NCBI GenBank assembly: GCA_001179505.1
Contig: CDMY01000243.1
Location: 434,001 to 498,000 of the forward strand
Length of the DNA stretch: 64,000 nucleotides
Source of the DNA: Vitrella brassicaformis CCMP3155
Lineage: Eukaryota; Protista; Chromerida
Reading direction: 5' to 3'
The translations under genes and the position numbers were made by a program. Within the stretch, counting starts at the first letter, position 1, and every line of letters begins with the position of its first letter. The notes beneath the pieces are model-generated. The model saw nothing but the letters and a program-made list of their open reading frames with translations, was not told the DNA's origin and ran no database searches. Below, one piece after another: positions 42,685 through 64,000 of this stretch.

Positions 42685-42699
42685 TGAGGGTGGGGTAGG

Positions 42700-45600
42700 G
42701 AGGGATGGATGGGAAGGGATGGAGCAGACACGAGGAAGAAACGTTTGTCGTGGCCTGCCTGCCTGGTCCGGTGTGTGTCTTGTCTTGCTGCCTTGCAAGC
42801 AATGCATTCATGAGGGTGGGAGCGTCCGTTTGATGGATGAATGAATGGGCAAACGTTTGGGAGGCAATGAGGGGCACTCATACAGACAGACAGATGTGCA
42901 TGCATCCATGCGTAAGGATGGATGGGATGCATTGCAATGCATGGAGTTTAGCCGTCCTTGTACGTATGTCTAAGCGTGTGAGTGAGGGAGTGAGTGAGTG
43001 TACCAAATTTCTGGTGGGGTGTCTTACGTCCCTGTCTTGCTGTCTGTATGTCTGCTTGTCTGCCTCCCGTTTTCTAGTCAGTCAGCCGTTGCTTGCGCAT
43101 CCATCCATCCATCGCACGGGGAGGGGCGATAGATAGAGACCAGCCATCTATCGCTTCGTACGCATGTCTATGCATCCTACCTACACACCCACTGACTGGG
43201 GATCGCAATGAATACGACCGACACGATGGGTACCGGAAGTAAGTCAAGTCCATCCACTTGTGTGTCTGGGGGGCTCGGCTTCTCTGGCTGTCTGTCTGTC
43301 TGCCTGTGTGTGTCTGTGGTGTGACTTGTTTGTGTCTGCCTATCGCATCAGTTCCACGTACCTCTATCTATCTATCGCACAAGTGATCTTTGCGTGTCGT
43401 GTCGGGGCATCAACGAGCATCGATGCATGCTGTGCTGCTTGCTGTCGGCTGGGGCGATAGATAAGATAGACCGGTGGAAGAACAGACAGACGGACAGGCA
43501 GATCGAGACGTGAGACGTCCTGTGGGAAAGAGACGAGCGAGTACTTAGTGGGTGGGTGTGGGTGTGGTTGGTTGAGTGCATATGGGCACAGGTAGATGAG
43601 CGGTGGGCGTGTGATGGGAAATGAAATGCCGACAGACCGGTGTTTTTGAGGCCGGTGTGTCGTTTTCCCCTCAAACAACAAATACCATACCGGTCGGTGG
43701 ATAGGATTGATATTCATTGGCGACCTCTTTCGTGTCCGTGGGTGGTTTCGGTGGCCTGGCCTTGACTGGCGGGAGTGGGTGGAGGGCCCCGCAGACAGAG
43801 TGCCCGACCCGCCTGCCACAAAAGCTCATGAATGAATGAATGAATGAATGGGGGAACAGAGAGAGAGAGTATTTCTTACATGTACGCCACGCTATGCTGT
43901 GCTCTGTTTTGTGTGTGTGTGGCTCTAGTCGTTGCATGACATGACATACGCACGCCCGTTGCCCCTCGATTGCACCCCCCGCACACCCGTCAGTCAGTCA
44001 TTATAATGCACCCACTTCTGCGTGTATGTCTGTGTGTGTGTGTATCCCTTTTCCCGCTGTGGGCCACAGCACAGCGTGCATTCATCCCACCCATCTGTGT
44101 GCAGCTCAGCTGCTGGCCTGCCTGCCAACGGTCGCTCTATTGCTTGCTCCACGAGTGTGGGAGATTGGTTGATTGACACACTCACCCACCCACCTGTCTG
44201 TGTGTGTGTGTGTGCTATCGTACTTTTATCTGTAAGTGTGGCGCCTCCGTTTTGATACTTCCGTCAGTCTTTTGATCGAGGACGTTTTGCCGGACAGACG
44301 AGGAGGCGAGGAAGGGGTGGCGAGCTTGGTGAGTGATACCGCTGCCTGATGGTTGTTCGTTGTGTGTGTGATCGATCATTAATGATAAGTATACTACGGT
44401 GATTTTCTCGGCTGCCTGCCTGCCTGCCTGCCTGAAGTAGGAAAGTGTGTCGTGTCAACCAACGGATATGAGAGAGCAGATGCCACGGCACGGTAGGTTA
44501 TTCATTGGTCCATCGATCGTTTCGGACATTGCATTGCACGAGGACGTGACAGTGTGTCAGTCAATCAATCAACGCAGTGGACGGCCCTTATCAAATCATT
44601 CTCACGGTCACCTCTCAGGTCGTCTCGTCTCGTCCACACCACACTTGTTTCTACCGTGAAGCTAGTAAGACACCCCAAGACACGCAGAGCTCGCTCCGCA
44701 AATGCTTTCACTGACGTACGGATGCACGGACGGATGCACTAGCTAGCGAGGGGGTGGGGTACTGTATGGGGGGCACGTATAAATGACTGAGATCGGTCGG
44801 ACTCATGCACACAACACACATGAGTGCGCTCACTCATGATGCATGGCCACACACACACGTGATGACTGACATGAATGAATGCACCGGTGGGTGGAATTGT
44901 GGGTGGGAGCCATCAAAAATGGGCGCCGACCGCCTGGATCCGATCCATGCGATGCACTCACGTACTCACACACACACACACACACTCGTTGGTTCCCTCT
45001 CAGTCGGTTGGTTGGTTTTTTCATTCAAACGCACCCACACGAACACTGCCGGCACAGACAGACGAGACGAGACAACACATACATACCTCACGAGGTGGGG
45101 GGNNNNNNNNNNNNNNNNNNNNNNNNNNNNNNNNNNNNNNNNNNNNNNNNNNNNNNNNNNNNNNNNNNNNNNNNNNNNNNNNNNNNNNNNNNNNNNNNNN
45201 NNNNNNNNNNNNNNNNNNNNNNNNNNNNNNNNNNNNNNNNNNNNNNNNNNNNNNNNNNNNNNNNNNNNNNNNNNNNNNNNNNNNNNNNNNNNNNNNNNNN
45301 NNNNNNNNNNNNNNNNNNNNNNNNNNNNNNNNNNNNNNNNNNNNNNNNNNNNNNNNNNNNNNNNNNNNNNNNNNNNNNNNNNNNNNNNNNNNNNNNNNNN
45401 NNGGGGAGCTAGCCATCGAAGTGCTTTAGAGGACCACAAATTGCAAGTAAGACGTATCTATCTATCCACTGCAGACCGGACAGCAAGTCAGACAGGCACA
45501 CAGCAGGCAGGCAGGCCACTCACTCAGTACAAGGAGGGAGGGAGACAGATGTGTGTGGGTTGGTTCACTAGCCGCCAAAGAGATAGATGGATGGATGGAT

Positions 45601-47450
45601 GGAGTGATGCAGTGATGCCGTCTGTCTGCATTATGTATGCATGCATGCATGTATGTGTATGTATGTATGTATGTATGCGATAGATGGAGCGATCAGATCC
45701 CTCCCCCCACACTACAAGACAAAACAACACAACACACGACACGACAAGACAAGACACGACAACAAATTACACATCAACACGCACTCCAAGCCCCAGTTAG
45801 TTAGTTATCAACGTACGTACAAAAGCAGACAGACGACCAAAAGAAGCAAGGAAGGAAGCCAGCCGGACAGCCAGGTATGTACCTAGTGAACCAACTTGTC
45901 CATGCCATGCAAACGAAAATCAAGCATCCATCCACCCGAATGAATGCTATGTCCATCCCTCCCTCCCTCCCTCCCTTGGTCCGTCGTGTGTCGAGTCCAT
46001 CAGGGTGCATACATACATACATACATACATAGGTACGTCCATGCGGACTCTCGTATTGAGAATACATGCACGCACCTGCACACCCGATACGATCGATACA
46101 CACCACACCACACGACCGCCGGCAAAGGGGGCCCCACCCGCCCACCCACTAAAGACAGACACACACAACCCCCAAAACACGGCGTATGCATGCACATCCA
46201 CCCACCCACCCATGCCATACACGTGCACACATGACGATAAAACAACCGTCCCATCAACCAGCCAACCAACAATGACCAACGAATCAATCAATCGATGAGG
46301 CATGGGCGGGTGAGTGCATAAATAAAACACAACCATTACAGAGAGAGGTAACTTGCCTATAGCCGTCAGTCACACCACACACACCACACCCATGGATGGA
46401 CGGATGGATGTACAGAAAAAGACACACACACATCAAGAGATCAAGAGATCAAGACAGACAGACAGACAGACATCCAAGCGAACGAGGGAGGAGATGGGCA
46501 GACCGGCAGGTAGACAGGCAGACAGATAGATAGGCAGATGGAGGGGCATGGAGGGGCAGGAAGTAAGCGAGTTACTTACTGCGTTACCTACACTTGTGCA
46601 GGGAGGGCACACAGACAGACGCACGTACCGTACAGGCCCAGACATGCAGACAGACAGACAGACAGACATGTGAGTGAGTGTGTAGCTAGGTCCACGCATC
46701 CACTCACTCCACTAACTCACCCCTCTACCCCCATGGATGTATATGCACTCACTGCACGGGTGTACTGAGTGCGAGTGCGATGGATGGAAACGGACGGAGT
46801 GGTCCATGTCCTGTGCTGTGCTGGCTTGATGAATGAATGAATGAATGGATGAATAAAGCACACACAACGTATACCGATACGTATACACACATAGATAGCA
46901 TAGCTTGATGTGTGTATGTGTATTGGTATGTGTTATGTGAGTAGATGAGATGGAGTCGGCAGGCAGGCACTCACTCACAAGCAGCGGGGGGGCTCGGTTC
47001 CACCACTCATGGCATGTCACACTGACTGAGGGCACACACACACACAAAGAAAGACATAGATAGGCAGAGAGTGAGTGACATTGACTAGAGGATGGGAGGG
47101 AGGAGAAAGCACTAACTAGTCTGTTCGTGTGTTCACGAACCCACTCACACACAGTGGACTTGCCTAACGCGTTGGTATGAGTACAAATGCATGGGCTTCT
47201 TTATACGTACGTACTTGAGGAAGGCAGCCAACGCGCCAGGACTCAGTTTCGCCAGTTGCAGCACAAGTAGACTACCTCACTCACGGGGCTGCACACACAC
47301 ACAGTACGGACACGGACACACAGACAGACAGACCGACAGACGGACGGATGCACTCACTCACTCACTCACGGAGAGAGCAGCGAGAGGCCCCATAGCACGT
47401 CAGTCCCCTCACTAACTCACTAACTGAAGCACACCCCTCTCTCCTCTCTC
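42700..47450. repeat. Microsatellite-dense, apparently non-coding region
   Basis: Dense (GACA)n, (CA)n, (TATG)n, (GGAT)n and (GAAT)n tracts. The ORFs here are low-complexity translations with no coding codon bias. Confidence 0.7.
45103..45402. other. Assembly gap (300 N)
   Basis: A run of 300 N. Confidence 1.
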
Positions 47451-47485
47451 CCTCCCTCTGTTTCCCTCTCTCCCTTTCTGCTTGC

Positions 47486-50400
47486 TTACATGTCCTTGTT
47501 GCCTATGTCCCCCCTCTGTGTGGCCATGTGCAGTGCCCGCGACCTCGGGGTCAGGTCACCATGCGCCTCCTCAGGAATTGCAAGCACACCGCTGCTGTTG
47601 GTACCCTCTGAAGACCCCTGCCGCGTCAACCAAGACGACTGGACCCCCACAGCCGCCATGCCCAATGCAGGCTCGGAATTGGCGCTGTTTGGCGGGACGG
47701 TGGTAGTGGCGCGGCTGCCTACTTCACCCTCGTCAAGCACACGCGAGAATATGTCCAACTTGTGCTTGCGGAGCAGCTCCGACAGCTTGGTTGTGGTCGC
47801 GCCAGTGGCAGTGGCCGTGGCGTGCAGTGGTTCCTCGTCTGTCGCCCTGTCGTTGGTGCCATCGGGAGGCGTCTTGGACAGGGTGGTGGGCGTGTTGGTG
47901 TCCAAGGGTGTCATGTTGTCGGCGTCCGTGGGGTCCAGCTGCTCGGTGGTGAGCGTGGGGGCGGCCTCGTAGGCCTTGTTGGGGTTGGCGCGGCGCCGCC
48001 GGCCGCAGCAGCCGCCATTGAGAAACCAACTGGTGACTGCCTGCCATATGCACTTGCGGATGCCGACCACGGCGTGGAACATCTTGCTCTTGGCCCGCTT
48101 GGGGAATTGCAACTCCACGTCGAGACCCAAACCGCTGGCCGCACCTGCACGTGGACACCAACAGGTGCAGTGCAGGCGTTGGTTGCATGCATCGACTGCC
48201 TCGTGTGCGTGGGTGGTGCTTGCCTTGCCTTTCGCACGTCTGTGTGTGTGGGTCTGTGTGTTGCTCACTGTGTTTGAGGACTTGTGTGTGCATGTTTTGC
48301 TGTCTGGAGAGTATCTGTGAGACCATCTCCTCGTCGTCCAGCAGCGCCACGTGCAAATCCTCAACCTGACAACAAACATCAATCAAACAACACAAGACAT
48401 CGGCCGGCCTCCCTCCCCCCCTCCCTCTGATGTCCTTGTCTTACTAACCGTCATGCCCAGCTGTAGTGCCTCTGATCGAGCGTCCCTCGCGAGCCGGTCG
48501 AAGGCCTGACGGATGCCCACTATCAGACGAACCTGCACACATACACACAGGGAGGGAGGGAGGGATGGATGTGGTGTTGGTTGGCTCTCTCTGATCACAT
48601 CATGTGTGCCTATCTATCTATGTAACATACCTTTTGTATGGCACATCTCCACCGCACCCGCGGGTGCTTCTTGAAGGCCGCCTCCGCATCAGCCGGGGTG
48701 CCACTCCCGCTCACACTCAGCAGCCCGGCTGACGTCTTGCTGCTCTTCCATACCTTGCGGAATAGGCTCACTGCAGACTCGCTGCCCGTCGAGGGGCGGC
48801 CGCTCGCAATGCTTGACGTGTTGGATGGCAGACGGAAGAACGAATGCAGCTTCTTGACGCTACGCCCACGGGGGAGGGCCGCAGGGTCGTTACTGCCGTC
48901 GGCAGTCTTGCTCAGGTCATCCTCCCCGGCCTCCTTCTTGTCTGCCGCAATAGGCGCAGCAGGAGGTGTATTGTCCTGTTCATCGGCGCTCTCGATTCCG
49001 CTGCTGCGGTTGCTGTCGTGTGTGGTGGTCCGCTCCAGCACCGCACCAGCGGGCGGGGGCGGCAAAAGGAGCTTGCCGGTGCCCCCATCACCCACACTAC
49101 CATCGCCATCGGCCGTCGCGTTGTCTCGCCTGGATGTGGCGTCGAGATCCTCCTCCTCAATGCTCTCGAGGTTGCTCTGGTTGGTCTCCTTGCGCAGCAG
49201 GGACCTCGGCGCCGTTGCAGGTGGTGGGTCCTCAGCCTCACCGTCGGATTGGCCCCTAACCGAGTGATCGGTGTCGCTCTCCTCCCCGCCCACGGCACTC
49301 TCGAGCAGCCCACAGGTGCCGGCGGCACTACTCTGGTTGGTACCCATACGTGAGAGGGGCTCTTGGGTGGTCAGCGAACGGTCGCCAGCCAGAGGGGGCG
49401 ACAGCAGCTTCTCACTCATGGTTGCAATCCCCTTGCCACCATCATGGAGGTCCAGGGCGGCCGAGATACCCCCGACACCACCAACACCCGTCGCCCTTGA
49501 ATCGCCCCCTTCCCGTCTCTCAAACGCATCGGGGCTGAGGCTTCTGCCCCGCCTGAAGGCACTCAGTGCCCGCACGGCCGTGGCCACTGATCGGAACCGC
49601 CGGAGTGCGTCGGATGGAGGGTCCATAGCTGTGCTGCTGGCCTCCCGTGAGGGCGGACTGTTTTCTCGTGTGAGGCTGTTGGACCTGCCCTGCAGGCTTC
49701 CGGGTGTGGATGTCCTCCTGAGGATGTCGCTGGCCTGCCGGATGAAGGCTGGGGTGGAGGGGGTCCGCTGCACCGTGGAGGAAGAGTTGGTGGCGGACCC
49801 GCGTGTGCCAAACCGCTTGCTCTTCTTCTTGACCATCGCAGCCTTCCTGCTGCTGATCACTATCCCCTGCAAGTAGATGCAAACAGACAGCCACACGGGG
49901 TGGGCGGCTGGCTGGATGGTCAAACCACACCGATCCCATGCTAACTAAGGTGCGTGCTTACCTTGAGCATTCGGATGCCGACAGGTTCCCTGCTGGTGCC
50001 TGCCAGCAGCAGGTTGGGGTCGATGCGTTTGATCTCCTCTCTGGCCTCGGCCAGCTGCTTCTGTGTGGCCTGGCGGTGGAAGACCCGCACGATGGCCTCG
50101 TGGACGAAGAACACGTCGAAGTAGGCCACCGCCTTGTGCAGCTGCGGCGCTACCGCCTCCTGAACTACCTCCTTGACGAAATCCCTGACACACGATCAAC
50201 GAGACAAGGGACACCAGTTCCACAATCCATATGCTCTCATGCCATGCGTGGCGTCGTATGGGTGTCAGTCATTCACTGACTTTTCTCTTTCTGAGAGTCG
50301 TGAGATGTCGAGCAGCTCGCCCCTGGCGCCCTCTCCCTTGCGCAGGTAAATCTTGCCCTGGTCCAGCATGACGATTGACCGGATCACCTTGGGCACCGGC

Positions 50401-53400
50401 GGCGGCCAGATGTACTTGGTGCACCAACCCGACACACGACGGCCGAATGACGACTGGTGCTTCCCTCCGTGGGGCTCCTTGCCGTCCTCTTCATTGCTGT
50501 CACCAGCCCCTTCCTCTTGTTGCTTGAGGTTATCGAGGGCCTTTGTCCGTGTGTCCATCCAGGCCTTGATGTAGGACCGGCAGAACCACAGCAGCGCCCG
50601 CACCACAAACACACCCTGCAGGCAGGCATATGGGGGGATCAAGACAGAAATGTATGTATGTATGCGGACGAAGAGAGAGAGAAGGGCGGGTGGGTGGGTG
50701 TTGACATACGTACGTGGAACACGATGATGAATATGACGACGGCGTACTCGGCACCCATCTCCAGCACACTCGACTCGGCATTCAAACTCTCCTGTGTACC
50801 GCATCCATCGCACACACACAACACAACACAGCGGGATTCAATGAATGCGTATGAGCTGCCAGTGAATCAGCCAGCGGCCATCCACCCACCCATCCCTACC
50901 AGCACGGGTACACAGAGTAGTGTGAGGAGGTATGCCCAGAGTGCGTGTGCCTCCAGCGAGTCGCACACCTTGAACGCCCTGTTGTCGTACGGCTCATAAC
51001 ACGCTAGAAACACATGGATGACACACACCCCACGTTGTCCATTTCTGAATCGCCCCTGAGTCTCCCTCCCTCTGTCTGTCCGTCTCTTGCTCACCGTTAA
51101 GGAAGAGTGACACGACGGCCAGCAGAAGGAAGACGATCAGCTGATGTGTGGAGTTGACGAACGGCAGGGCCTCGGGCAAGTCGACCATCACACGACGAAA
51201 CATCGCCCACGCCTCCCCTTATATATATGACACACACATGTCATGACACACACAACAAAGCCGTGTCAGCCAATAGTGTTTGTGTGCGTGGTGCCTGAGG
51301 CTCACTTACACCAGTAGAACTGTGGTTCATATCCGCTGTAGAGGAATCCATATCGCTTCTTGACGTTTTCCTCGTGGAGTCTGTGTCGTATGCGCCACAT
51401 GACGACCACGACGAGGAGGGGCAGGCCGAGGGTCCACAGCAGCACCCCAGCCACCGACAGCCAGTACCAGGGCATGTGGTCGCCCTCACACACCACACTC
51501 GGGGCGGCATCCACTCGCGGACGGTCTATCGTGATGCAATTCATGTTGATCACAAATTGCTGAACAAACCAACAAACCAAACAAACGACAAATGAATGAA
51601 TGGGCGGGCACTGTATTGTTGCTGTTTGTCTGTCTATTGTCCGTCGGCTTGGCTTGGCTTCCCTCTGTCTTCTCTCTTTTTAGCCTACACACCCCAGCCC
51701 ACCTTGGTCATGAGAGGGTGGAGCAGTACGATGAGTACGACAATACATGAGGTGGCCTTCTGGCCGACCTCAGCCCAGAAACTCTGCTCCTCATCCTCCT
51801 TGCCACGCAAAAAGTTCTGCAGCCGACCCAAATACACGTTGTTGGTCTGATCCTGCTGATCACCCCCACGACCACTAGCACCCTCCAATGCAGTACCACC
51901 AGCACCCCCGCCACCGCTGCCACTGCCGGCTGCCGCTCCTGCTGCTCCTGCTGTCGGCTGCGACTCTGTCTTGGGCCGTCTCTTGCGGGAGACCCAGACC
52001 TTGGCAGCGTAGAAGCCCGTGATGACCATGACAGTGGCTGGGGGGAAGAGGAACGCGAGTATGCAGAGGACGTGTATCGCGGGCATCGAGACGACGGCGC
52101 ACTCGAGGCCGACGAAGTTGAGAAGCGGATTCGTGAGCGACTCAAGGTACATGATGAAGGACGAGATCGACTGGACGCTCTGCAGACTCACCACCTCCAT
52201 CGCCATCCCCACAGCTGGACCGCTGCAACCAACAAATGCAATCAATCCAATGCAGACAGACAGACAGGGAGGGAGGGAGGAAGGAAAACAAAAACACACG
52301 ACATTCATTCGTTTAGCCATGGCAGTCAGTCAGTCAGTCAGTCAGGGGGGAGGGGATCTCACTCGGTCACTCACTGACCATATCTCAAACCACGTCTGGG
52401 CGATTTTGAATATGGATCCCTGAACGCCCACCGACTCAGCGCCGTCGATGAGTGTCCACCTCATGAGGAAGGCCGCCATCCCGAAGCACACCCCGAGGAT
52501 GAGGCCCAGCTTGACCCACGCCCACCAGGGATCCTCACACTCGCGACACGGACCGTAGTGCAGAAACGGATCCGCAAACCCATCCCTACACACAGACAAG
52601 ACAGACAGCCAGTACTGCAGTACACCACTAACCTGCGTGTGTGTACGTCTGTGTGTGTGTGTGCCTCCCCTCCCTCTCTCTCTTGTGTTAGTTAACACGA
52701 CCGACTCACTGGCATGTGAGGCAGAGGTCGCCGGTGGATCCCTTCTGGCACACATTCTCCCCCAAGCACCGCTCCTCGTCGGGGCACTGCAGGAACGTGT
52801 ACAGCTTGGACGACTGCGCGTACACGTCAAAGTCAGCCTGGTCGTTGGCAGACGGACCACCACCACCACCTGCCGCTGACGCATTGCCCGAAGCCGATGG
52901 TGCTGCTGCTCCTGACGGTGATGACGAGACGGCAGATTTGCCAGCCATGGGTGGGGCTGGCGTGCCGCTTCGCTGTTCGTTCCCCTGCCAGTCACCGGGT
53001 GCGAGGAAGGTTGTGAACCGATGGTAGCCGGAGAGGGCCACCGGGTTAGCTCGCTGCTCGGGCAACGTGCAGTTGGCACCAATTGGACACTGTAATCCAT
53101 GTTATCAATCACCCACACGGACAGACAAGAGGTATGTGCAGGCGGTGCTGTGCTGTGTCCAGATGCCTTGGCTGGCTGGCTGGGCTGACCATGGTGCAAG
53201 TGGACGCCGCGGCCTCCTCTGCGATTGTGCCCTCAGGGCACTCGGAACACTTGGCGGACGACATGAACGCTGCGAAAAAACCAGGCCTGACACACGTGAC
53301 ACATAAACACACACACACATGACACATTGCAGTGTGTCTGTGGCTGCCCCCCTCCCCTCCCCTCCCCTCCCCTCCCCCCCGCCCAACTGACTCACTCGCA

Positions 53401-56400
53401 TGGCAGGCAGGAGATGGCGGCTCTGCCGGCGTGGTATCCCTTGGGGCATCTGTTGCACTCAAACATCCCGGGTCGTGGCGAGGCGTTGCCCACAGGGCAT
53501 GCCTCGCACTGCTCCATATCGTCCCTGCGGTAGTATCCGGGGCTGCATGGGCGGCAGAAGTCCGACGACCGCCACTCGTCGTCCACCACAAAATGGCGCC
53601 ACAGGGCTGGCTTGGGCGGCTCGTACCCGGGCCGGCAACCAAACATGAGCTGCTCAAACACCACACGCAGCTGCTCCCTCACCTGGCAATCATCAAACCA
53701 TCCATCCCAAAGACACAGACATTCAGACACTGGTCGGCCGGTCGGTGCATCCATCCGCTACCACTGACTGACCATTTTCTCAGCGAGGCTCTTGGGTATG
53801 CCTGGGGTGAGGGATGGGTTCTCGAATAGGGTGATCTGGTTCTCCAGGGGGACGTTATAGAAGACGTCGGGTATGTTGCCCGAGAGCTCGTTGCCGTGGA
53901 GGAAGATCGACCGTGCCTTGGTGAGGTTGCCCATCGACACAGGCAGCTCACCACTCAACCTGAGGGGAGGGGGGCGCCGAGAGAGCGAGACACCCAATAT
54001 ACATAATGCCAGTCCATCGATGCCATCGATGGGGCGTCTTGTGTGTGTGGAGTGGGTAAGTCAGACAGACAGTCCATGCATACATACTTGTTGTATTGCA
54101 TGTACAGGTGTGTGAGGTTCTTCATGCCGGGGTAGGTCACGTTGCCGTCCTGCCCCTCGCCACCGCCTATGCACGCCGGCACACTCCCCTGCATGTTGTT
54201 GCGCGCCATCTCAAACCTGACACACAGACAGACAGAGCAGATAAGCAGAAAGGTGGCCGACTGAGTGTTGGTGTCATTCATTCATTCATTCATTGATTGA
54301 TATCCCCTCACTGACTCTTCCAGCATGGTGAGCATGCAGACTTGGTCTGGCAGCTGGGCCTCCAGTCGGTTGCCCCCCGCCTTCAGAATCGTCAGGGAAC
54401 CGCAGTGGCCGATCGAACGCGGCAACGTCCCCCTCAGCGAATTCTGAACACACACACCACAACACACCACACGCACAAACACACACACATGGACGTACCG
54501 TACGTACGTACGTCAAGACACCGCATGCACCCTCGAGTCAGTCGATGCTTGTGCGTGCAGTGCTTCCACCCACATGACATACATACATGTCCACATACAC
54601 GTACGTACCTCTTCGAGATAGAGTTCTTTGAGCTTTGATTTCTGGGAGGGGTCTTGTGGGCACAGGTTGGGTGTGAGGTCGGGGATCTGGCCGTCGAACT
54701 TGTTCTTGGCCAGGTTGATGCTGCTGCAGTGCGACAGCTGACCTATCTCGGCCGGGATAGCACCACCCAAGTCTGCTCTCATACCATACCATACACCACC
54801 GCACACACCCAACACGGGCACACATGACATGTCAGTCGACCCATTTATCCATCCATCCATAAGTACAGACACTGACTGACTGATTCATGTGTGGGAAGGG
54901 AAGGTAGCTAAGCTGACCGGCGGCCTGCAGCATGAGTTCATAATCCTCTTCGTTGCATATGATGGCGTCCCACATTCGGCAGAAGGTCCGGCTGATGTTG
55001 AACCGGCCCAGCGACTCGACTCCCTGGTTGTTCTCCAGTAGGGCGAAGTAGAGGTCGGCCACTGCCAGTTTGTCGTCTGCGCAGACTTTGCAGCTCTCAC
55101 CGCAGAACAAGCAATCGCGGGGCGTCTCCGCCACCCCCCCTGGCCACACCAGGTCCGACTCGTTGGTGAATCGCCAGCTGTCCGTCTCCCACTTGGCCAC
55201 CTCCGCCCAGTCCGTGCCCTGGTTGTTCATCAGGACGTATCGCCCCTCTCCCTCCCTGTCTTCACCCAGGTGCACACGACCAGTGACGCCGTCGAAGTCT
55301 ATGTCGGGCAGGGCGTCGAGGAGCAGCCTGCCGAGGGGGTTGACTTCGAATGATGCGCTGGACACGTTGGCGGCTGAGGTCGTCTCGTTGTCTGCTGGCT
55401 CGGGTAGTGTGCCGTTGAAGCCCTTCAGGGCCTGGTCGAGGGCTCGTGCGGCCAGCTGTGCGGCGTCATAGCTGTAGAGCACGTAGTTGCTCAGCGACTC
55501 CTCCTCCGCTCGCGTCAGGTTCAGACGGGGAACAAAACTGATGTCCACACACAGAGCAGCAAACATTCGTGACGGTGCGGGGCATTATGGGTTCTCTGTT
55601 GTCTGGCGCTTTGGTATCTACCCTCCCTCCCACCTATCGGCGGCTCCGCCTTGGCTGCTGAGTGAAGGTGTGACAGCCATGAAGCCCTGAGTGATGTTGG
55701 TGAAGTCGGGCTCAGAGAATATCCGGGGCATCGTGTCCGTCCCTAGCCAGGCCTGAACAACACAACACAACACAACACACCCAGACAGACAGAGGACAAC
55801 AAGACAGACACATCAGATCAGTCAAATCAGTCAGTCAGTCAGCCACGTGTGTGTGTGGCTGTGCTGTGTATGTCTGTTGTGCGTACGCACCGTGCCCCTG
55901 GTGAATATGCCGATTTGGTCCCCCGCTCGCAGGACGGTGTGCAGTATCGACGCACTCACCGCCATCACAAACACCGCCGCATCGTACTGATTCCGCGACA
56001 AACCTACACTCACATGCCATGACCCACACACACACATGCCGCGCAGCAGGCACAGACCCAGTGCAATGCCTGTCCTGTGTGCTTTGTTTGGTCTAGTTAC
56101 CAGAGAGTATTTCGACGGCTGTGTTTGGGTTCCTCACGGCCAGCTCGAAATTGTCGGTCGACACGTCGTAGTCCTCGCGCATCGACACAAACGTGTTCTG
56201 AATGCCACGCCCGTACGTGTCATCCTGATGGAACCCAGGCAGGCAACACACGCACAGCACACATTCCTCGGTGCGGATGGCTGGCTGTCAAAAGTCTGTC
56301 CTTCCGTTTTGATGGACCGACCGACCGAGTGGATGATGACCAGTTTGGTCCACCTAAATCGCTTTGCCAGGGAGAGAATGGCCCGCACCTGAGAGGCGTC

Positions 56401-56918
56401 ACTCGCCGCAAGACCGAAGAAACTCTCGTGCCTGTAGGTAAGACACACATCACATCACATGCATCCGTCGGTCCGCTCATCAATCCATCCATCCATCCAT
56501 CCATCCGGTGCAGCGCATCTGTCACAGACCTGAAAATGTCCGGTGCAGTAGCGGATGGCGAGACGAGAGGGATCCTGAAGAATCCCGCCAGTGGGAGCGC
56601 CTCGGCCGCCATGGCGCTGCTCATGGGCCCCACGATGATGGACGCACGGGCAGCTATCAGCCGCCGCACCGCCAGCAGCCCAGCCACAGGGTCGTCCGTG
56701 TTGTCCTCCACCATCAGCCGCACCGTCCTGTTGCCCAGCAGCGTCTCGTTGGCATTAATGTCGTCCACCGCCAGCTGTATCGCCCGCTGACGGGTGCCGT
56801 CGTTGGCCTGGTTGAGCAGGGCGCCCATCAGCAGGACAGATGTGTTGTTGGGTTGCGCTGAGGCGGCCACCACCAGGCCCGCCACCACAGCCAGGCTCAC
56901 AAAACCTCTCATCCTCAT
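47486..56918 (-). CDS. Large mosaic membrane receptor-like protein: signal peptide, Venus flytrap (ANF-receptor/PBP type I), LRR, Cys-rich repeats, multi-TM (about 7), long disordered cytoplasmic tail
   Basis: VFT: AIQLAVDDINANETLL...IIVGPMSS...IPLVSPSATAP...RWTKLVIIHS|DDTYGRG...YSYDAAQLAARAL...FDGVTGRVHL. LRR: LGGAIPAEIG, NKFDGQIP, NSLRGTLPRSIG, NKLSGELPVSMGNL, GNELSGNIP. CxxCxxG repeats. TM region includes YGFLYSGYEPQFYW. Confidence 0.8.
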
Positions 56919-57265: not shown

Positions 57266-59394
57266 ATGTGGACGCCTGTGGCGGAGATCTTGGTCTTGGT
57301 GGCCGTTTGGGTCATATTATTACATGAATGTGCGGCGGCGCGGAAGGCTGAGTACGATGCCGTGATTGTTGGAGGAGGCCTGACTGGGTGAGCACACTCA
57401 ACTCACTCAGTTGATGGATGCATCTGTCTGTCTGTCTTTCTGCTCCATCCATCTGCCCTCAATCATTCATTCAATGCATGCAGGTTGAGCCTCGCCCATC
57501 AGCTCAAAAAGGCCGGTATCGACAAGTTTGTCGTTTGTGAGGGCAGCAGCAGGCTAGGCGGCAATGTTATCTCAAGAAAAATGAGGGGCGGCTTCCTGAT
57601 TGAACAAGGTACACCAAGTGAGTGCACGCGTGGAACACACACGTGGCACGGCATCCATCTCTTGCTTCCTTCTCGGTATGTTTGCTACTAACCTGTCTGC
57701 TTGCTGGTCGGTCAAGGCCCGAATTCTTTCCAGCCGGTCGAGGAGATGCTGGAGGTGGTGAGCGATTTAGATCTGTCGCTGGTGTACAGCAACCCCAAGC
57801 TGCCGCGGTTCGTCTACCACGGCGGCAAGATGCACCGGCTGCCGTCAAGTCTCAAGGACTTCCTCAGCCCCTCCTTCACACTCCTCAGTGGTTGGGCCAA
57901 GGCTCGTCTGGCCATCGGCATGGTCGGCTTCAGAAAGGGAAAGCCACACACCGATGATGAAAGTGTCAAAGGGTAGGCGCGACGCAGCAAGGAAACACGT
58001 ACGTACCCTTGTTTGTGTGTATGAGTTGTGTCTGTTCTGCCTGCAGGTGGTTTGAGAGAAATCTCGGCCCTTGTGTGTATGCGAAGATTGTAGAGCCCTT
58101 TGTGTCAGGTGGGTTTAAGATGGCACAGCATACTTGTGAGGGACGGCATTACCGCTCGGGGCCAGCACAGCACATATACTATCATTCATGTGTGCAGGCG
58201 TGTATGCTGGAGATGCGAGCCGTCTGGCAATGAGATCAGCGTTCCCCAGAATAGCCGGTACACACAAAACCAAGACATCCGGCTGGCTGGCTGGCTCATT
58301 CATTATATTTGCTTTCCTGGTCGTGCATCCGTCAATTGCTCAGCTCTTGAGCAGGGACCCGGCACCGCAGGCATCCTCTGGGGCGCTTTGGCGCGTGCAC
58401 GGCAGCGCAAGAGAGCCAAGAGGGAGTATCAACTGCCGTCGCCACCACCCAGGGGCGCGCTGGCGAGCTTCGAGGGCGGCATTGAGCAGCTGCCCCGCGC
58501 CCTGGCCGAGAAGCTGGGCAGGAAGGCGTGTCGGACGGGGTGGCGGTGTGTGGACATTGCCAAGGACAATAAGGGGGGTGATTTCGTCACGACTTTCCGG
58601 CTGCCCTTCGGCCGTCGTCGGCGTGTGACGAGCAAGGTTGTGGCGCTCGCTCTTCCAGCACACCGTAAGCCGTGACCCACCCACTGACTGCCGGAACCCA
58701 TGCGTACGTATCCTTTTGACTGGCTGGGCTGTTTGCTGCCTTTGTCCGTCACGTCAGGTGTGTCCGGTCCCCTCCGGCACCTGGTACCTGAGGCGTCGGA
58801 GCTGAGTTCAATCCCGCACCCCTTCGTCGCCACAGTGGCGCTCGCGTACCCGGACGATGCATTTCGCCAGCCCCTGCGCGGCTTCGGCAACCTCATACCG
58901 AGGAGCGAGGGCCTGCGGCACCTGGGGTCCATCTACGCCTCGTCGCTCTTCCCCGGAAGAGCGCCCAAGGGATGGCAGATGCTCACGAACTTTGTCGGCG
59001 GCAGTCATGACCCGGCAGCCGAGAAGCTTAGCAACAGGGTATGCATGCAGAAATGCTCACATCCATCCATACGCCTGTTGTGCCCTTCCTTCACCTTCAG
59101 CAACTATCTCGGGTCGTGGATCGGGAGCTGCGCAAGACAGTGCTTCGTGATGGCTACAGGGGGCGGGGGAGGGTGCTGGGCGTCAAGCGGTGGCCGTCAG
59201 CCATACCACAACCGGGCCAAGGACACGAGGACCTGCTGTCTCGTGTGCAGGCCGGTGTCTCACGACATGTGGGCTTGTTTGTCGATGGGTCGTGGTCCTC
59301 TGGCATATCTGTCGGTGACCGCATCAAGGCCGGCAAGCTGCTGGCGGCGGATGTGCTGAATGCAGTCATCAGGAAGAGATTCGAGCGACAGTGA
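57266..59394 (+). CDS. hemY: Protoporphyrinogen IX oxidase (HemY/PPO, plastid-lineage type)
   Basis: YDAVIVGGGLTGLSLA, RLGGNV, IEQGPNSFQP, IVEPFVSGVYAGD, AFP, SFEGGIEQLP, GFGNLIPRSEG, LGSIYASSLFPGRAP, WPSAIPQ. Confidence 0.93.
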
Positions 59395-59595: not shown

Positions 59596-62500
59596 ATGGC
59601 GCTTGTGCACCTGTTTGCCCTCCTCTTTTCCGCGTCACTGGCGGCCGTCCCGGATCCGCCCTCCCATCCCCATCCCCCCTATCGCCTGGTCCGTCTGTCC
59701 CTGTACCACACTGCAGTGAGTCACCCGGTGTCTGCACCCCTTGGAATCGATGACCAGCTGAAACTGCATGGCAATAATCAGCCGACAAATGTCAGCGGGA
59801 CGCACATTGCAAGCAGGGGGGATGAGAGTCCCTCTCACCCTCACCCTGGCCCATCGCAGCCGGTGGCAGAGGAGCCTCCAGCAACCAAGGGCGGCAAGGA
59901 TCATGCGGGAAAGAGACAAGGAGAGGGCAGAGACGAGGAGGAGGAGGGAGAGGACGTGTGCGAGGGGGACTTGGACCAACGGCCCAAAAACATGACGGTA
60001 GGCAGGCATGTGCACGGGGTGGCTCAGTTCGCTTGCAGGCGCTGGATTGCATGAATGCGATGCGGGCTGTGCTGTGTGTCTGTACGTACGTATGTCTGTG
60101 GGGTGGGTGTGCTGTGCAGGCGTGTGAATACTACAAGGAGTGTCCCGAGTAAGACGAAAAACAGCATACACACAGAAGCATCCATCCATCCACTCGTGTC
60201 TCTGTCTCTCTGTCTGTCTGTCTGTCTGTCTCGGTGCAGGGAGTCGTTGGTGCCGTATGGTCAGCTGCACTACTGCCACACACAGAGCATCCCGCTGTCC
60301 CTCGGTGCGGGACTCCTGTGGCTCGTCTACCTCTTCATGGCTGTAGGAGACCTTGCTGATGGTAGACAGACAGACACGTGGAGAGCCGTGGCATACCGAG
60401 CACTTCGCTTGGCGCCAAGCGTGCACGGCGAGTGGTGTGGTGTGCAGGGTACAACTCTCCGCTGCTGATCGACGTGTGTGACAGAATGGGTCTGAGCGAG
60501 CAGGTCGCTGGTGCCACCTTCCTGGCGTTTGGCAACGCCGCGGGAGACGTCGTGTTGGGACTCAGTGCCAACCTCACTGGCGGCGATGACAACCTGTACC
60601 TGTATGTGGGCATGGTTGTGGGCGCAGTCCTGTTCATCACACTGGTGGCCTTGGGCGGCATCATCTTCGCATCTCCCGGCGTCTTCCTCCACCCACGATC
60701 ACTCATCAAAGATGCAGGGTGAAAGGGGTGGTGGGGGGGGGGACACGTGCCATGCACACACTCGGATGGGACGGAGAGAGACACAAACAAAGCGATCTTG
60801 GTACCGTACCCTTCAGCTTCATCTTCGTGGGTATGGGGTTCCTCTTTATGTTTCGGCTGCTGGGGGAGGTGTCCAAGATGTTGGCGATGGTCTACTTGTC
60901 ACTCTATATCATCTATGTGGTGCTGACGGTCTTCATGCCCGTCCCCGACCCCGAGGCTGCCGAGGGCGGCGATATGGTGGACGAAAAGGCCATATCGGTG
61001 ACGGTCACGGCCGCGTCAGCAAGAGACTTGTCGGCTGCCCGGCCGACAGTGAGCATATTCGCGCCACACGAAGAGGACGTGAATGGAAAGTCCGGGACGA
61101 CACTCACCCCGGGGACGCTGGGGCTGCCTCCACCCGCTGCCAAGACCGACATCGGCAGTGAGTGGGGCTCACATCACAGCTCATATAAGACAGACAGCCA
61201 AGATAAGATACATACCCATGTCTCTCTCCCCTCCTCTTTATGTCTTTTGCGTGTGTGCTTAATTGTGCGTGTTGAGAGCGCAAGTCGACTGTAGCCGAGA
61301 CACTGCTGAACCTGAACATGGGCAAGAGGCAGAGCAGGGTCGCATCGGTCATCGCCAGACAGTCGGGGGTAGACGTCCACCGCGCGAGTGTGGCCATGGG
61401 GCGTGAGTCGTTCCGCAAGAGTGTCATGGACGGCATGTCTGCCACGGTGCGCCGGTCGACAGTGAAGGCGGCCTTCAGTCTTGAGAACAAGGCGGCCGAG
61501 CTGGGCTGGGCAGGTCTGAGCATGCCCGAGAAGATCCAGTTCATCCTGCTGCTGCCCCTGCGACTCCTGTGGAACATTTCCATCCCAGTATGTATGTATG
61601 GGTGTATGGGTGTATGTGTATGGGGCAGGTGGGGTGTGGGCGCCCGTCCGTCCTTCCCTCTATATGCTGTCTGTCTCGTGTGTACACGAACCTCCCTGAC
61701 TTTATGTGTACTCAATGCAAACGGGGGCAACGCAGATTTTGTGTGTCCTTGTTGGTCTTGTCTCTTCAGAATCCGGTGTCTGACCCCAACCCCGCGATCC
61801 TGTCGGCCGCCCCAGTGGTCATGGGTGCCCTCATCGCTGCATACACTTTCCGGCTACCAAGCAAGAGAAATCCCGTCAAGGAGTACATTCATTCAAGTAC
61901 ATACATGTCGCTCTCTTGTGTGTCCATTCATTCAACCAGGAATTTGGTGGAGAACCACGGCAAGATGGGCGGCATCGCCATAGCTGCGGTGATCGTCGTT
62001 GTGGGCGTGGCTGGGTCCGTCGGGATGCACATCACATACGCCAAAAATGCCGAGGAGTGAGCATGAAATCCCCGAGCCCCATATTTCATGTCATTTCATA
62101 CGGGTGTCTTGGTTGGTGTGTGTTCAGTCCGCTGCCCAAGTGGGTGGAGGTCTTGTTGGTGGTGTTTGGCCTCATCATGTCCCTATTTTGGATCAAAATC
62201 GTGTGCGACGAGATGGGTCGGTCAGCCAGACACACCACACCACGCCACGCCACGCCACTCCTGAATGAATGGATGCATCTGTGCTGATGAATGGATGGGT
62301 GGGTGTATATGCAGTTGGGATCTGCAGTCTGATAGCGCAGTTGTTGAGACTAAAACTAGCGATTGTCGGCCTCACCATCCTGGCCGTGGGTGCGTCAGCC
62401 ATTGAGACACCTCTCTTGTCACTCAGCCTGGCGTACGTGACGCGGATGAGTCGATCCTTGTTTGTTGGTTGGTTTTGTAGGCAACAGCGTCGCTGACTTC

Positions 62501-63650: not shown

Positions 63651-64000
63651 GAACAATCGATCAATGCAGAATAAACCAACCGGCATTGATTGCAATGCCA
63701 TGCACACACATGCAGACGCATGCACGACAGGCACGTCACGCATACGTAGATACAGACAGACAGACAGACAGACAGACCTACCTGTATTGTCGCGACATGC
63801 ACAAGTAAGTGACAGACAGACAGACAGACAGACTTACGGACATTCATTCCATGTAGGACACCTAAATACATACCCGTGACTGACTGACTGACAACATGTC
63901 CTGTCCGTGTGTACGTCGTGTATGTGTGTGGGTCATGCCACCGACAGCCACTCGTCCAGTTCAGGAGGATCCCCCAACTGAACGCCAGAAGCAGGGGACC

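What the first reader, a model, noticed from the sequence alone, without database searches (positions are those of the whole stretch)
47486..56918. Mosaic receptor fusing a class-C-GPCR-like Venus flytrap with plant-type LRRs, Cys-rich repeats and a multi-TM domain
Seen in order on the minus strand: signal peptide; Venus flytrap ligand-binding domain (about 56850-55150); LRR cap (FCRMWDAIIC) and LxxNxLxGxIP LRRs with inserts (about 54960-53790); CxxCxxG repeats (about 53660-52560); roughly 7 hydrophobic helices with GFLYSGYEPQFYW (about 52530-50560); and a very long Ser/Arg-rich tail with no kinase or cyclase domain I can recognise. Established: VFT occurs in mGluR/GABA-B/ANF receptors and these LRRs in plant receptor kinases. 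I am not aware of a described receptor with this combination. Inference: a dual small-molecule/protein sensor in a lineage with few canonical GPCRs.
Basis: partly seen in the sequence, partly recalled or inferred. Interest (0 to 1): 0.7.

Follow-up and report, generated by a model that had tools for sequence, protein, structure and literature searches.

The report
Flytrap-plus-LRR sensor on a CRMP membrane core
This is one real gene of the alga Vitrella brassicaformis, a free-living relative of malaria and Toxoplasma parasites, in which a small-molecule-binding "Venus flytrap" domain and plant-type leucine-rich repeats sit on the multi-pass membrane core of the CRMP family, not on a GPCR; parasites use that family to trigger host-cell invasion.

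Summary
Window 56918/56912 to 47243 (minus strand) is one 26-exon gene, identical to the public Vitrella brassicaformis protein of 2264 aa.

Its domains, in order:
- signal peptide
- ANF_receptor Venus flytrap (E 2e-45)
- about 8 plant-type LRRs
- Ephrin_rec_like Cys repeats
- DUF7630
- a roughly 9-helix membrane core
- a conserved cytosolic helical domain
- a Ser-rich disordered stretch
- a conserved C-terminal helix block

The membrane domain is not a class-C 7TM domain. [quoted passage not shown] Profiles built from it hit Plasmodium CRMP2, Besnoitia CRMPA and Chromera CRMPs at E 1e-23 to 1e-50. The family is very large (6103 representatives). A confident AlphaFold model (pTM 0.81) matches no solved fold, neither GPCR nor TRP channel.

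The full VFT-LRR-CRMP layout recurs in a Vitrella paralogue and in at least three Chromera velia proteins, so it is ancient in chromerids and not a gene-model fusion.

The most likely function is a surface sensor, possibly for an amino-acid-like ligand. It would relay through the CRMP core to a Ca2+ or exocytosis response; this step is inferred, not shown.

I rate it a new ectodomain variant of a known family, of moderate interest.

The parts
47243..56918 (-). Whole coding span of one 26-exon gene. Annotated ATG at 56912, alternative in-frame ATG at 56918, stop codon 47245-47243. Product is 2264 aa, identical to a public Vitrella brassicaformis protein (contig CDMY01000243.1).
   Evidence: Exon list reproduces P0001 exactly; 25 GT-AG introns of 83-201 nt. 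Public annotation gives one gene of 9670 nt. An independent Viterbi model agrees for the first 21 exons.
56856..56912 (-). Signal peptide (aa 1-19, ...AASA|QP).
   Evidence: Hydropathy peak of 1.86 at the N-terminus; sequence read directly.
55216..56792 (-). Venus flytrap / ANF_receptor ligand-binding domain (aa 41-389), spread over exons 1-6.
   Evidence: Pfam ANF_receptor E 2.4e-45 and Peripla_BP_6 E 1.8e-20. Closest solved structures: Arabidopsis GLR3.4 amino-terminal domain, 3e-22, then mGluR5. Seven of the 8 residues of the amino-acid-recognition motif are present.
54925..55119 (-). Cys-rich linker (CLFCGESCKVC) and LRR N-terminal cap (FCRMWDAIIC), aa 422-486.
   Evidence: Sequence; included in the alignments to plant LRR receptor-kinase ectodomains.
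53776..54924 (-). About 8 plant-specific-type leucine-rich repeats (LxxLxLxxNxLxGxIP), aa 487-690, two of them with inserts.
   Evidence: Pfam LRR_1 7e-10 and LRR_8 2.6e-8. Best solved matches are GSO1, MIK2, FLS2 and PEPR1.
53069..53643 (-). Cys-rich stalk: Ephrin_rec_like (TNFR/furin-like) CxxCxxG repeats, aa 705-826.
   Evidence: Pfam Ephrin_rec_like, 3 stretches, 24.0 bits against a cut-off of 23.1. NCD3G is weak only (15.2 against 38.9).
52832..53014 (-). Low-complexity Ser/Ala/Gly/Pro spacer (aa 845-905); not conserved in the paralogue.
   Evidence: Alignment of P0001 with P0002.
52537..52795 (-). DUF7630 Cys module directly before the first membrane helix (aa 918-962); part of the CRMP 'conserved core'.
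   Evidence: Pfam DUF7630 E 1.4e-14; found in 28 of 30 family members scanned.
50565..52533 (-). CRMP-type multi-pass membrane core (aa 964-1390). It has about 9 helices, a disordered cytosolic loop (aa about 1097-1150), an extracellular beta-hairpin with two invariant Cys, and the invariant motifs GFLYxGYxPxxYWWE and PYDNR.
   Evidence: Profile hits: Plasmodium CRMP2 1.3e-26; Besnoitia CRMPA 2.9e-23 / 5e-42 and Cvel_18313 7e-50. AlphaFold pLDDT 83.9, pTM 0.81. No PDB fold match. PF06011 'TRP' 27.9 bits against a cut-off of 28.5.
49965..50402 (-). Conserved membrane-proximal cytosolic helical domain (aa 1445-1558).
   Evidence: Iterated search hits the segment just after the core in about 44 of the roughly 170 sequences searched. 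AlphaFold pLDDT 76.5, helical. No PDB fold match.
48679..49866 (-). Ser/Ala/Gly/Arg-rich, poorly conserved (probably disordered) cytosolic region (aa 1560-1955).
   Evidence: Composition; near-absence of conservation with P0002.
48273..48672 (-). Conserved C-terminal block (aa 1958-2030): RWRxAIQKVRLIxGIRxAFDxLARDARxxALQLGMTVEDLHVALLD, encoded across three exons.
   Evidence: The P0002 tblastn pieces covering this block are 53-80% identical (alignment). Also detected in Chromera P0016 (1.4e-7) and Vitrella P0017 (8.9e-5).
47243..48272 (-). Non-conserved C-terminal tail. The last intron (47489-47289) is the least certain part of the model.

Best explanation
Window 56918-47243 (minus strand) is a single gene of the chromerid alga Vitrella brassicaformis. 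It encodes a 2264-aa surface protein of the cysteine repeat modular protein (CRMP) family.

As in all CRMPs, a variable ectodomain sits on a conserved core: Cys-rich Ephrin_rec_like/DUF7630 modules, a roughly 9-helix membrane domain and a juxtamembrane cytosolic helical domain. Here the variable part is a Venus flytrap domain followed by plant-type LRRs.

Proposed working (inferred, not shown):
1. The flytrap closes on a small ligand, probably an alpha-amino acid or a derivative. The LRR solenoid may bind a peptide, protein or glycan.
2. The change passes along the disulfide-rich stalk to the membrane core, probably working as a dimer with a paralogue, as in Toxoplasma.
3. The core's most conserved motifs lie on the predicted cytosolic face. 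The core then starts an intracellular response: Ca2+ entry and/or triggering of regulated exocytosis, the role CRMPs have in Toxoplasma (rhoptries) and Tetrahymena (mucocysts).

Shown here: gene structure, domain identities, CRMP homology, conservation of the layout in chromerids. Inferred: ligand class, topology, dimerisation, output.
For: One gene:
- The exon model reproduces the public protein exactly, with 25 GT-AG introns, and the public annotation has one gene.
- Those gene models were made with Augustus using RNA-seq intron evidence (PMC4501334).
- Paralogue P0002 is colinear from signal peptide to C-terminal block.

Domains: Pfam; VFT against GLR3.4/mGluR; LRR against plant receptor kinases.

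CRMP membership:
- The exhaustive profile search finds 6103 relatives. One of them, P0062 (E 1.3e-26), is named cysteine repeat modular protein 2 of Plasmodium.
- DUF7630 is present in 28 of 30 members.

Same layout elsewhere: Chromera Cvel_1746, Cvel_3372 and Cvel_932 carry ANF_receptor + LRR + Ephrin_rec_like on the same core, which the exhaustive profile search matched in each. Cvel_20683 has the same core and is named a ligand-binding-region protein by UniRef, but I did not scan it myself.

Ligand hint: 7 of 8 residues of the amino-acid-recognition motif in this protein and 8 of 8 in the paralogue (motif as quoted in PMC12965686).

Output by analogy:
- CRMPs are required for rhoptry discharge in Toxoplasma and for mucocyst discharge in Tetrahymena (PMC9670195; PMC9815656).
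- There is recurrent weak similarity to PF06011. From my own knowledge, the fission-yeast member of that family is Pkd2, which passes Ca2+ when reconstituted (PMC9727806).
Against: - No expression, localisation or ligand data for this protein were available here.
- The strict 8-residue motif fails: one spacer is 11 rather than 13-14 residues, and the Arg is Gly in this protein. The Chromera homologues do not match it at all.
- Topology and helix count are read from a predicted model's secondary structure and hydropathy only.
- The PF06011 similarity is just below the curated cut-off for this protein and covers only the last third of that profile.
- No CRMP has a demonstrated biochemical output, so the 'Ca2+/exocytosis' step is analogy twice removed.
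- It is unknown whether Vitrella uses rhoptry-like exocytosis.
Confidence: 0.6

Rival explanations
1. It is an atypical class-C GPCR: the VFT and Cys-rich region feed a divergent heptahelical domain that couples to G proteins.
For: - True ANF_receptor VFT whose best solved matches include mGluR5, mGluR1 and taste receptors.
- Weak NCD3G-like Cys pattern (27.4 bits in paralogue P0017).
- Seven strong hydropathy peaks.
- PANTHER labels some CRMPs 'GPCR-related' (PMC9670195).
Against: - No 7tm_3 or any other GPCR family hit at E<=0.1.
- NCD3G is far below its cut-off.
- The confident model has about 9-10 long helices.
- Foldseek against the PDB gives no GPCR match better than E 5.6, TM-score 0.12-0.19.
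- The core is homologous to CRMPs, which the CRMP authors themselves say are not bona fide GPCRs.
Confidence: 0.05
2. It is a ligand- or stretch-gated cation channel: the CRMP core is a distant relative of the fungal Flc/Pkd2 'TRP-like' family (PF06011) and itself conducts Ca2+, gated by the VFT/LRR ectodomain.
For: - PF06011 matches residues 1250-1401 at E 1.4e-6, 27.9 bits against a cut-off of 28.5.
- 7 of 30 family members match at E<=0.01.
- Vitrella paralogue P0017 reaches 28.7 bits, above the cut-off.
- Reconstituted S. pombe Pkd2 passes Ca2+ on membrane stretch (PMC9727806).
- This reading overlaps with the best explanation as one possible output.
Against: - The match covers only profile positions 268-417 of 426 and is borderline.
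- No TRP_N/ML-like domain is present.
- No match to canonical TRP or polycystin channels by sequence or fold.
- No conserved acidic pore-like motif could be located without coordinates.
- No CRMP has been shown to conduct ions.
Confidence: 0.2
3. The architecture is a gene-model artefact: two or more neighbouring genes (a secreted VFT-LRR protein and a membrane protein) wrongly joined.
For:
- The public models are Augustus predictions.
- The last intron and the choice of start codon are uncertain.
Against: - The open frame is continuous through 25 in-phase GT-AG introns of uniform size.
- My independent model gave the same joins.
- The paralogue is colinear end to end.
- Three Chromera proteins have the same order of parts.
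- There is no stop, promoter-sized gap or second signal peptide between the parts; the largest internal intron is 165 nt.
Confidence: 0.03
4. It is mainly an adhesion or cell-wall/matrix-anchoring protein with no signalling role. The VFT and LRR would serve as binding modules only and the membrane core as an anchor.
For: - CRMP ectodomains in parasites are adhesive-type modules such as Kringle, MAR and lectin.
- No enzyme domain in the tail.
Against: - Within the aligned core the invariant and near-invariant residues lie mainly in the loops and helix ends predicted to face the cytosol. A juxtamembrane cytosolic domain and a C-terminal helix block are also conserved. That is unnecessary for a mere anchor.
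- CRMP loss blocks triggered exocytosis, not attachment (PMC9815656).
Confidence: 0.1

Closest known systems
Cysteine repeat modular proteins (CRMPs) of Apicomplexa and ciliates (Plasmodium CRMP1-4, Toxoplasma CRMPA/B, Tetrahymena CRMP1/2)
   Same: - Signal peptide and a large modular ectodomain.
- Ephrin_rec_like/EGF-like Cys modules directly before a multi-pass core with GFLxNGY..YWWE and PFDxR motifs.
- Long cytosolic tail.
- Significant profile hits to named CRMPs.
   Different: - The ectodomain here is a VFT plus plant-type LRRs, rather than Kringle, MAR, lectin or EGF modules.
- The organism is a free-living phototroph.
- This clade has an added conserved C-terminal helix block.
- Function is untested.
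Chromera velia VFT-LRR proteins Cvel_1746, Cvel_3372, Cvel_932 (and probably Cvel_20683), and Vitrella paralogue P0002
   Same: Same order of parts: ANF_receptor, LRR, Ephrin_rec_like, DUF7630 (found in two of the three Chromera proteins scanned), CRMP core, cytosolic domain. They are the best-scoring relatives of the membrane core.
   Different: - The Chromera proteins are about 1000 aa longer with long inserts. Their VFTs are more diverged (ANF_receptor E 1e-8 to 4e-10) and do not keep the amino-acid motif.
- All are unnamed or auto-named database entries.
- Cvel_20683 was not scanned with Pfam here; its ligand-binding region rests on its UniRef name.
Class C GPCRs (mGluR, CaSR, GABA-B, T1R)
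   Same: An N-terminal ANF_receptor VFT with most of the amino-acid-binding residues, followed by a Cys-rich rigid connector to a multi-pass domain.
   Different: - No 7tm_3 domain and no true NCD3G.
- LRRs are inserted between the VFT and the stalk.
- The core has about 9 helices and an unrelated fold.
Plant LRR receptor kinases and receptor-like proteins (FLS2, GSO1, MIK2, PEPR1)
   Same: A 24-residue plant-specific LRR consensus with an N-cap containing paired Cys. These are the top solved matches.
   Different: - Only about 8 repeats.
- No single-pass helix plus kinase.
- The LRRs are sandwiched between a VFT and Cys repeats.
Fungal Flc/Pkd2 'TRP-like' family (Pfam PF06011)
   Same: A multi-pass domain with an N-terminal extracellular part and a cytosolic tail. 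Borderline HMM similarity over the last helices.
   Different: - No ML-like TRP_N domain.
- The similarity is partial and at the threshold.
- The relationship was not confirmed by profile-profile or structure comparison.
Plant glutamate receptor-like channels (GLR3.4) and animal iGluR amino-terminal domains
   Same: The best solved sequence match of the VFT is the GLR3.4 amino-terminal domain (3e-22).
   Different: No S1S2 ligand-binding domain and no Lig_chan pore domain.

Membership tests
CRMP (cysteine repeat modular protein) family | Multi-pass membrane core homologous to that of named CRMPs | tested here: met
CRMP (cysteine repeat modular protein) family | Cys-rich EGF-like/Ephrin-receptor-like modules immediately N-terminal to the core (the 'conserved core' of PMC9815656) | tested here: met
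   Ephrin_rec_like x3 and DUF7630 at aa 705-962. DUF7630 is present in 28 of 30 relatives. Core definition read.
CRMP (cysteine repeat modular protein) family | Signal peptide, large extracellular N-terminus, cytosolic C-terminus (odd helix count, 9 in apicomplexans) | tested here: inconclusive
   The signal peptide and about 9-10 long helices in the AlphaFold model fit N-out/C-in. The topology was not determined experimentally and model coordinates could not be inspected.
CRMP (cysteine repeat modular protein) family | Required for triggered exocytosis (rhoptry or mucocyst discharge); forms a CRMP-CRMP complex | not testable with these tools
   Known for Toxoplasma and Tetrahymena only.
Class C GPCR | ANF_receptor Venus flytrap domain | tested here: met
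   E 2.4e-45; mGluR and T1R among the solved matches.
Class C GPCR | 7tm_3 heptahelical domain | tested here: not met
   No hit at E<=0.1. The model has about 9 helices. No GPCR fold match.
Class C GPCR | NCD3G nine-cysteine domain | tested here: not met
   15.2 bits against a cut-off of 38.9.
Plant-type LRR receptor kinase / receptor-like protein | Plant-specific 24-residue LRRs with an N-cap | tested here: met
   LRR_1/LRR_8; GSO1, MIK2 and FLS2 are the top solved matches.
Plant-type LRR receptor kinase / receptor-like protein | Single-pass helix followed by a kinase domain or a short tail | tested here: not met
   Multi-pass core and no Pkinase hit.
Fungal TRP-like Flc/Pkd2 family (PF06011) | HMM score above the curated cut-off over the membrane domain | tested here: inconclusive
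   27.9 against 28.5 bits, covering profile positions 268-417 of 426 only. Paralogue P0017 scores 28.7. 7 of 30 relatives match at E<=0.01.
Fungal TRP-like Flc/Pkd2 family (PF06011) | N-terminal ML-like (TRP_N) domain | tested here: not met
   No such hit.
Canonical TRP / polycystin cation channels | Six-helix voltage-gated-like fold with a pore loop | tested here: not met
   No Ion_trans or PKD_channel hit. No PDB sequence match. No fold match.
Ionotropic glutamate receptor / plant GLR | S1S2 ligand-binding domain and Lig_chan pore | tested here: not met
   Only the similarity to the amino-terminal domain is present.

The most novel reading that the evidence does not exclude
The CRMP core is a signal-transducing, possibly ion-conducting, membrane module with no solved counterpart. 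The chromerid VFT-LRR versions would preserve its ancestral use as an environmental chemosensor. Because the flytrap points to a defined soluble ligand (an amino acid or a relative), this protein could be the first CRMP that can be switched on at will. That would make the open question of how CRMPs trigger rhoptry or extrusome discharge directly testable.
Probability: 0.2. Interest if true: 0.8.

Novelty: new variant of a known kind. Interest (0 to 1): 0.5.

Why it matters
[quoted passage not shown] What they sense and how they signal is unknown, and no structure exists.

Free-living relatives of the parasites attach a bona fide small-molecule-binding flytrap and a peptide/protein-binding LRR solenoid to the same core. 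This suggests the core is a general transducer that accepts many kinds of sensor.

It also offers a version with a guessable ligand for biochemical and structural work. And it adds a case of a VFT coupled to something other than a 7TM, guanylate cyclase or glutamate-receptor pore domain.

Tried and rejected
- Word-indexed homology searches failed for the membrane region. With the membrane region alone, and then with a 40-sequence profile, they returned 1 and 5 hits. The candidate list was probably swamped by low-complexity or LRR words. The exhaustive profile search was needed.
- PDB sequence searches with the membrane profiles found nothing meaningful.
- Foldseek against the PDB found nothing for the membrane-core model (best E 1.6, TM-score <=0.17) or for the cytosolic-domain model (best E 2.1). 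Neither GPCR, TRP, transporter nor any known cytosolic fold could be assigned.
- The strict 8-residue amino-acid motif regex does not match any of the eight proteins. Only a version with relaxed spacing does, and only in the two Vitrella paralogues and one protein of unknown origin.
- I looked for paralogue P0017 (same 669-kb contig) inside the window. It is not there.
- Pfam scans of eight large neighbouring ORFs gave one hit only, an IF-2-like match.
- An IQ/calmodulin-binding reading of the conserved C-terminal helix was considered. The spacing does not fit the IQ consensus and Pfam gives no IQ hit, so I leave it as speculation.
- I found no paper describing a VFT or LRR on a CRMP core.
Full report
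**What is in the sequence.** The region is eukaryotic and intron-split: ORFs jump between the three minus-strand frames. I trained a small codon-usage and GT-AG Viterbi model on obvious exons and hand-curated the short 5' exons. This gave one open frame starting at the ATG at 56918.

A homology search showed that residues 3-1561 of this model are 100% identical to a public protein. That protein, P0001, is 2264 aa, an 'unnamed protein product' of Vitrella brassicaformis CCMP3155. Mapping P0001 back to the window and solving the tail joins reproduces it exactly from 26 exons, from ATG 56912 to stop 47245-47243. All 25 introns are GT-AG and 83-201 nt long, median 100. The public record (contig CDMY01000243.1) has one 9670-nt gene at this place. 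Those models were made with Augustus using strand-specific RNA-seq intron hints (PMC4501334).

Two small conserved exons were missed.

**Domains.** Pfam on the spliced product gives:
- ANF_receptor at aa 43-391 (E 2.4e-45)
- LRR_1/LRR_8
- Ephrin_rec_like, three stretches
- DUF7630 (E 1.4e-14)
- a borderline hit to PF06011 'TRP' over aa 1250-1401 (27.9 bits against a cut-off of 28.5)

No 7tm_3, kinase, cyclase or ion-channel family appears at E<=0.1. NCD3G is far below its cut-off.

The VFT's best solved relative is the amino-terminal domain of Arabidopsis GLR3.4 (3e-22), followed by mGluR5, mGluR1, T1R3 and NMDA-receptor amino-terminal domains. The LRR segment aligns best with plant LRR receptor kinases (GSO1, MIK2, FLS2, PEPR1), so 'plant-type' is correct. 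Hydropathy shows a signal peptide and seven strong peaks in the membrane region. The tail is Ser/Ala/Gly/Arg-rich.

**One gene, and an old layout.** A second Vitrella protein (P0002, 2035 aa, 47% identical) is colinear from the signal peptide to the end. Two cytosolic blocks in it stand out against unconserved surroundings: a juxtamembrane block (aa about 1445-1558) and a C-terminal helix block (aa about 1958-2030).

The best-scoring relatives of the membrane core outside Vitrella are four Chromera velia proteins: Cvel_1746, Cvel_3372, Cvel_20683 and Cvel_932. I scanned three of them. All three carry ANF_receptor, LRR and Ephrin_rec_like N-terminal to the same core, and two of them also hit DUF7630. 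The fourth, Cvel_20683, rests on its UniRef name only.

The layout therefore predates the Chromera-Vitrella split, and a gene-model fusion is very unlikely. A further Vitrella paralogue on the same contig (P0017) has LRR, Cys repeats and core but no VFT. Two proteins from unidentified organisms (P0104, P0159) have a VFT or periplasmic-binding-protein domain plus Cys repeats and core, but no LRR.

**What the membrane domain is.** An exhaustive profile search with the Vitrella pair (DUF7630 to the end of the juxtamembrane block) found 6103 cluster representatives at E<=1e-3 and 1119 at E<=1e-10. One listed hit, P0062 (1.3e-26), is 'cysteine repeat modular protein 2' of rodent Plasmodium species. 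Others are from Theileria and the ciliate Stylonychia.

I then took the 'conserved core' sequences published with the Toxoplasma CRMP study (PMC9815656, S3 Table) and scored them with my profiles, using a database size of 1.8e9:

| Published CRMP core | Two-sequence profile | 40-sequence profile |
|---|---|---|
| Chromera Cvel_18313 | 7e-50 | 5.7e-60 |
| Besnoitia CRMPA | 2.9e-23 | 5.1e-42 |
| Chromera Cvel_7366 | 3.7e-21 | 8e-36 |
| Gregarina CRMPA | 2.1e-9 | 3.8e-29 |
| Dictyostelium Q86I19 | 5.6e-9 | 2.7e-21 |
| Besnoitia CRMPB | 2.3e-5 | 2.1e-14 |

The shared motifs are visible by eye: the Cys knot before helix 1, GFLxxGY..YWWE..RK, and PFDxR..LE. The protein is thus a CRMP-family member. 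That paper already notes 'many diverse CRMPs' in Chromera. However, its domain tables contain no ANF_receptor or LRR entry, it does not include Vitrella, and it does not list Cvel_1746 or Cvel_3372.

**Fold.** AlphaFold2 on a 30-sequence alignment of the core gave a confident model: mean pLDDT 83.9, pTM 0.81. It has about 9-10 long helices, a disordered loop after the third long hydrophobic helix, and a short beta-hairpin carrying two invariant cysteines.

Foldseek against 350,542 PDB chains found nothing (best E 1.6, TM-score <=0.17). GPCRs, TRP channels and transporters appear only as noise. The juxtamembrane cytosolic domain is detectable in about 44 of the roughly 170 sequences searched. 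It models as a helical bundle (pLDDT 76.5), again with no PDB match. The CRMP core therefore has no solved counterpart in the PDB copy searched (sequences to 2026, folds to April 2026).

The only link to a named membrane family is the recurrent borderline similarity to PF06011. Seven of 30 relatives match at E<=0.01, and paralogue P0017 scores 28.7 bits, just above the cut-off. From my own knowledge, PF06011 is the fungal Flc/Pkd2 family. Reconstituted S. pombe Pkd2 passes Ca2+ when the membrane is stretched (PMC9727806).

**How it probably works.** Read with an N-out/C-in topology, the invariant and near-invariant residues of the core lie mainly in loops and helix ends predicted to face the cytosol. 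Examples are GFL..G, the E of YWWE, the R/K that follows, and the P of PYDNR together with the LE that follows it. A few conserved extracellular cysteines are the exception. This is my inference from the model's secondary structure, the positive-inside rule, the position of the Cys hairpin and an N-x-T sequon. Variable sensors outside and a constant face inside is what one expects of a transducer.

The VFT keeps 7 of the 8 residues of the amino-acid-recognition motif: S98, T122, D139, Q142, Y167, G168 and an acidic residue about 80 positions further on. The motif's Arg is Gly134 in this protein but Arg in the paralogue, and one spacer is 2-3 residues short (motif as quoted in PMC12965686). An amino-acid-like ligand is therefore a reasonable guess for the Vitrella pair, but not for the Chromera proteins.

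CRMPs are needed for triggered discharge of rhoptries in Toxoplasma and mucocysts in Tetrahymena, without being needed to build the secretion site. The Toxoplasma pair is predicted to dimerise through the membrane domains.

My best reading is a surface chemosensor. Ligand binding at the VFT and/or LRR would be relayed by the Cys-rich stalk to a dimeric CRMP core, which starts a Ca2+ and/or exocytosis response. Gene structure, domains and family membership are shown here. Ligand, topology, dimerisation and output are inferred.

**Comparison and novelty.** It works like a class-C receptor only in its outer logic (VFT, then Cys-rich connector, then multi-pass domain). It fails the defining 7tm_3 and NCD3G tests. 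It is not a plant LRR kinase, a glutamate-receptor channel or a canonical TRP channel.

It is a member of the CRMP family with a previously undescribed ectodomain. I found no paper mentioning a VFT or LRR on a CRMP core. The proteins themselves sit in public databases under automatic names. I therefore rate it a new variant of a known kind.

**Limits.**
- No transcript, localisation or functional data were available.
- Model coordinates could not be inspected.
- The PF06011 link was not tested by profile-profile comparison.
- The organisms behind P0104 and P0159 are unknown.
- The literature search covers open-access papers and bioRxiv only.

Noticed in passing
window 56432-56529, 55753-55890, 54773-54917 (introns 1, 4 and 6 of the gene): Several short introns carry tetranucleotide runs such as (GGAT)n, (GACT)n and (CAGT)n. 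Examples are ggatggatggatggatggattgatg, gactgactgactgatttgactgatctgatg and cagtcagtcagtgtctgtacttatggatggatggataaatgg. The commonest donor hexamer in the gene is GTCAGT (4 of 25 introns).
   Followed up: partly
window 42685-47242: A stretch of about 4.5 kb with no annotated gene lies downstream of the receptor gene. It includes the lowest-GC part of the window (0.44 at 44-46 kb, against about 0.56 elsewhere). It contains CATG/CATA-type simple repeats that translate as MYVCMYVC in several spurious ORFs.
   Followed up: partly
window 57266-59394 (+): The upstream neighbour is a divergently oriented Amino_oxidase/NAD_binding_8 gene (506 aa). By eye it looks like protoporphyrinogen oxidase. Only about 350 nt separate the two start codons, so the two genes may share a bidirectional promoter region.
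   Followed up: partly
window 59596-60722 and 60833-63009 (+): Two adjacent same-strand gene models (275 and 440 aa) each carry one Na_Ca_ex domain and lie 110 nt apart. Cation/Ca2+ exchangers normally have two such domains, so this may be one gene split by the annotation.
   Followed up: no
window 63933-64000 (-); 39798-42684 (+); up to 39504 (-); 27576-28694 (-): Other neighbours in the window:
- a Homeobox_KN gene running off the window end
- a Beta_helix_4 protein
- a Na_Pi_cotrans gene
- an ORF with IF-2 / EF-G domain 2 matches
   Followed up: no
window 48273-48672 (aa 1958-2030 of the product): A strongly conserved basic amphipathic helix block sits far out in an otherwise unconserved tail: RWRxAIQKVRLIxGIRxAFDxLARDARxxALQLGMTVEDLHVALLD. 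It is shared with the Vitrella paralogue, Chromera Cvel_1746 and Vitrella P0017. It has no family match. It looks IQ-like but does not fit the IQ consensus.
   Followed up: partly
P0017 (CEL96613.1; same 669-kb contig, outside the window): A shorter Vitrella paralogue (1439 aa) has LRR, Ephrin_rec_like, DUF7630 and the core but no VFT. It is the one relative whose PF06011 'TRP' score (28.7) passes the curated cut-off.
   Followed up: partly
P0104 (4207 aa) and P0159 (1254 aa), from Logan assemblies of unknown organisms: Both combine a VFT/periplasmic-binding-protein domain with the CRMP core but have no LRRs. Flytrap-CRMP fusions may therefore not be confined to chromerids. In P0159 the domain scores best as bacterial-type Peripla_BP_6 (6e-32).
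   Followed up: partly
P0016 (Chromera Cvel_1746): UniRef names this 3409-aa VFT-LRR-CRMP protein 'C2H2-type domain-containing protein'. My Pfam scan found no zinc finger at E<=0.01, so the name looks like an automatic pattern match.
   Followed up: no
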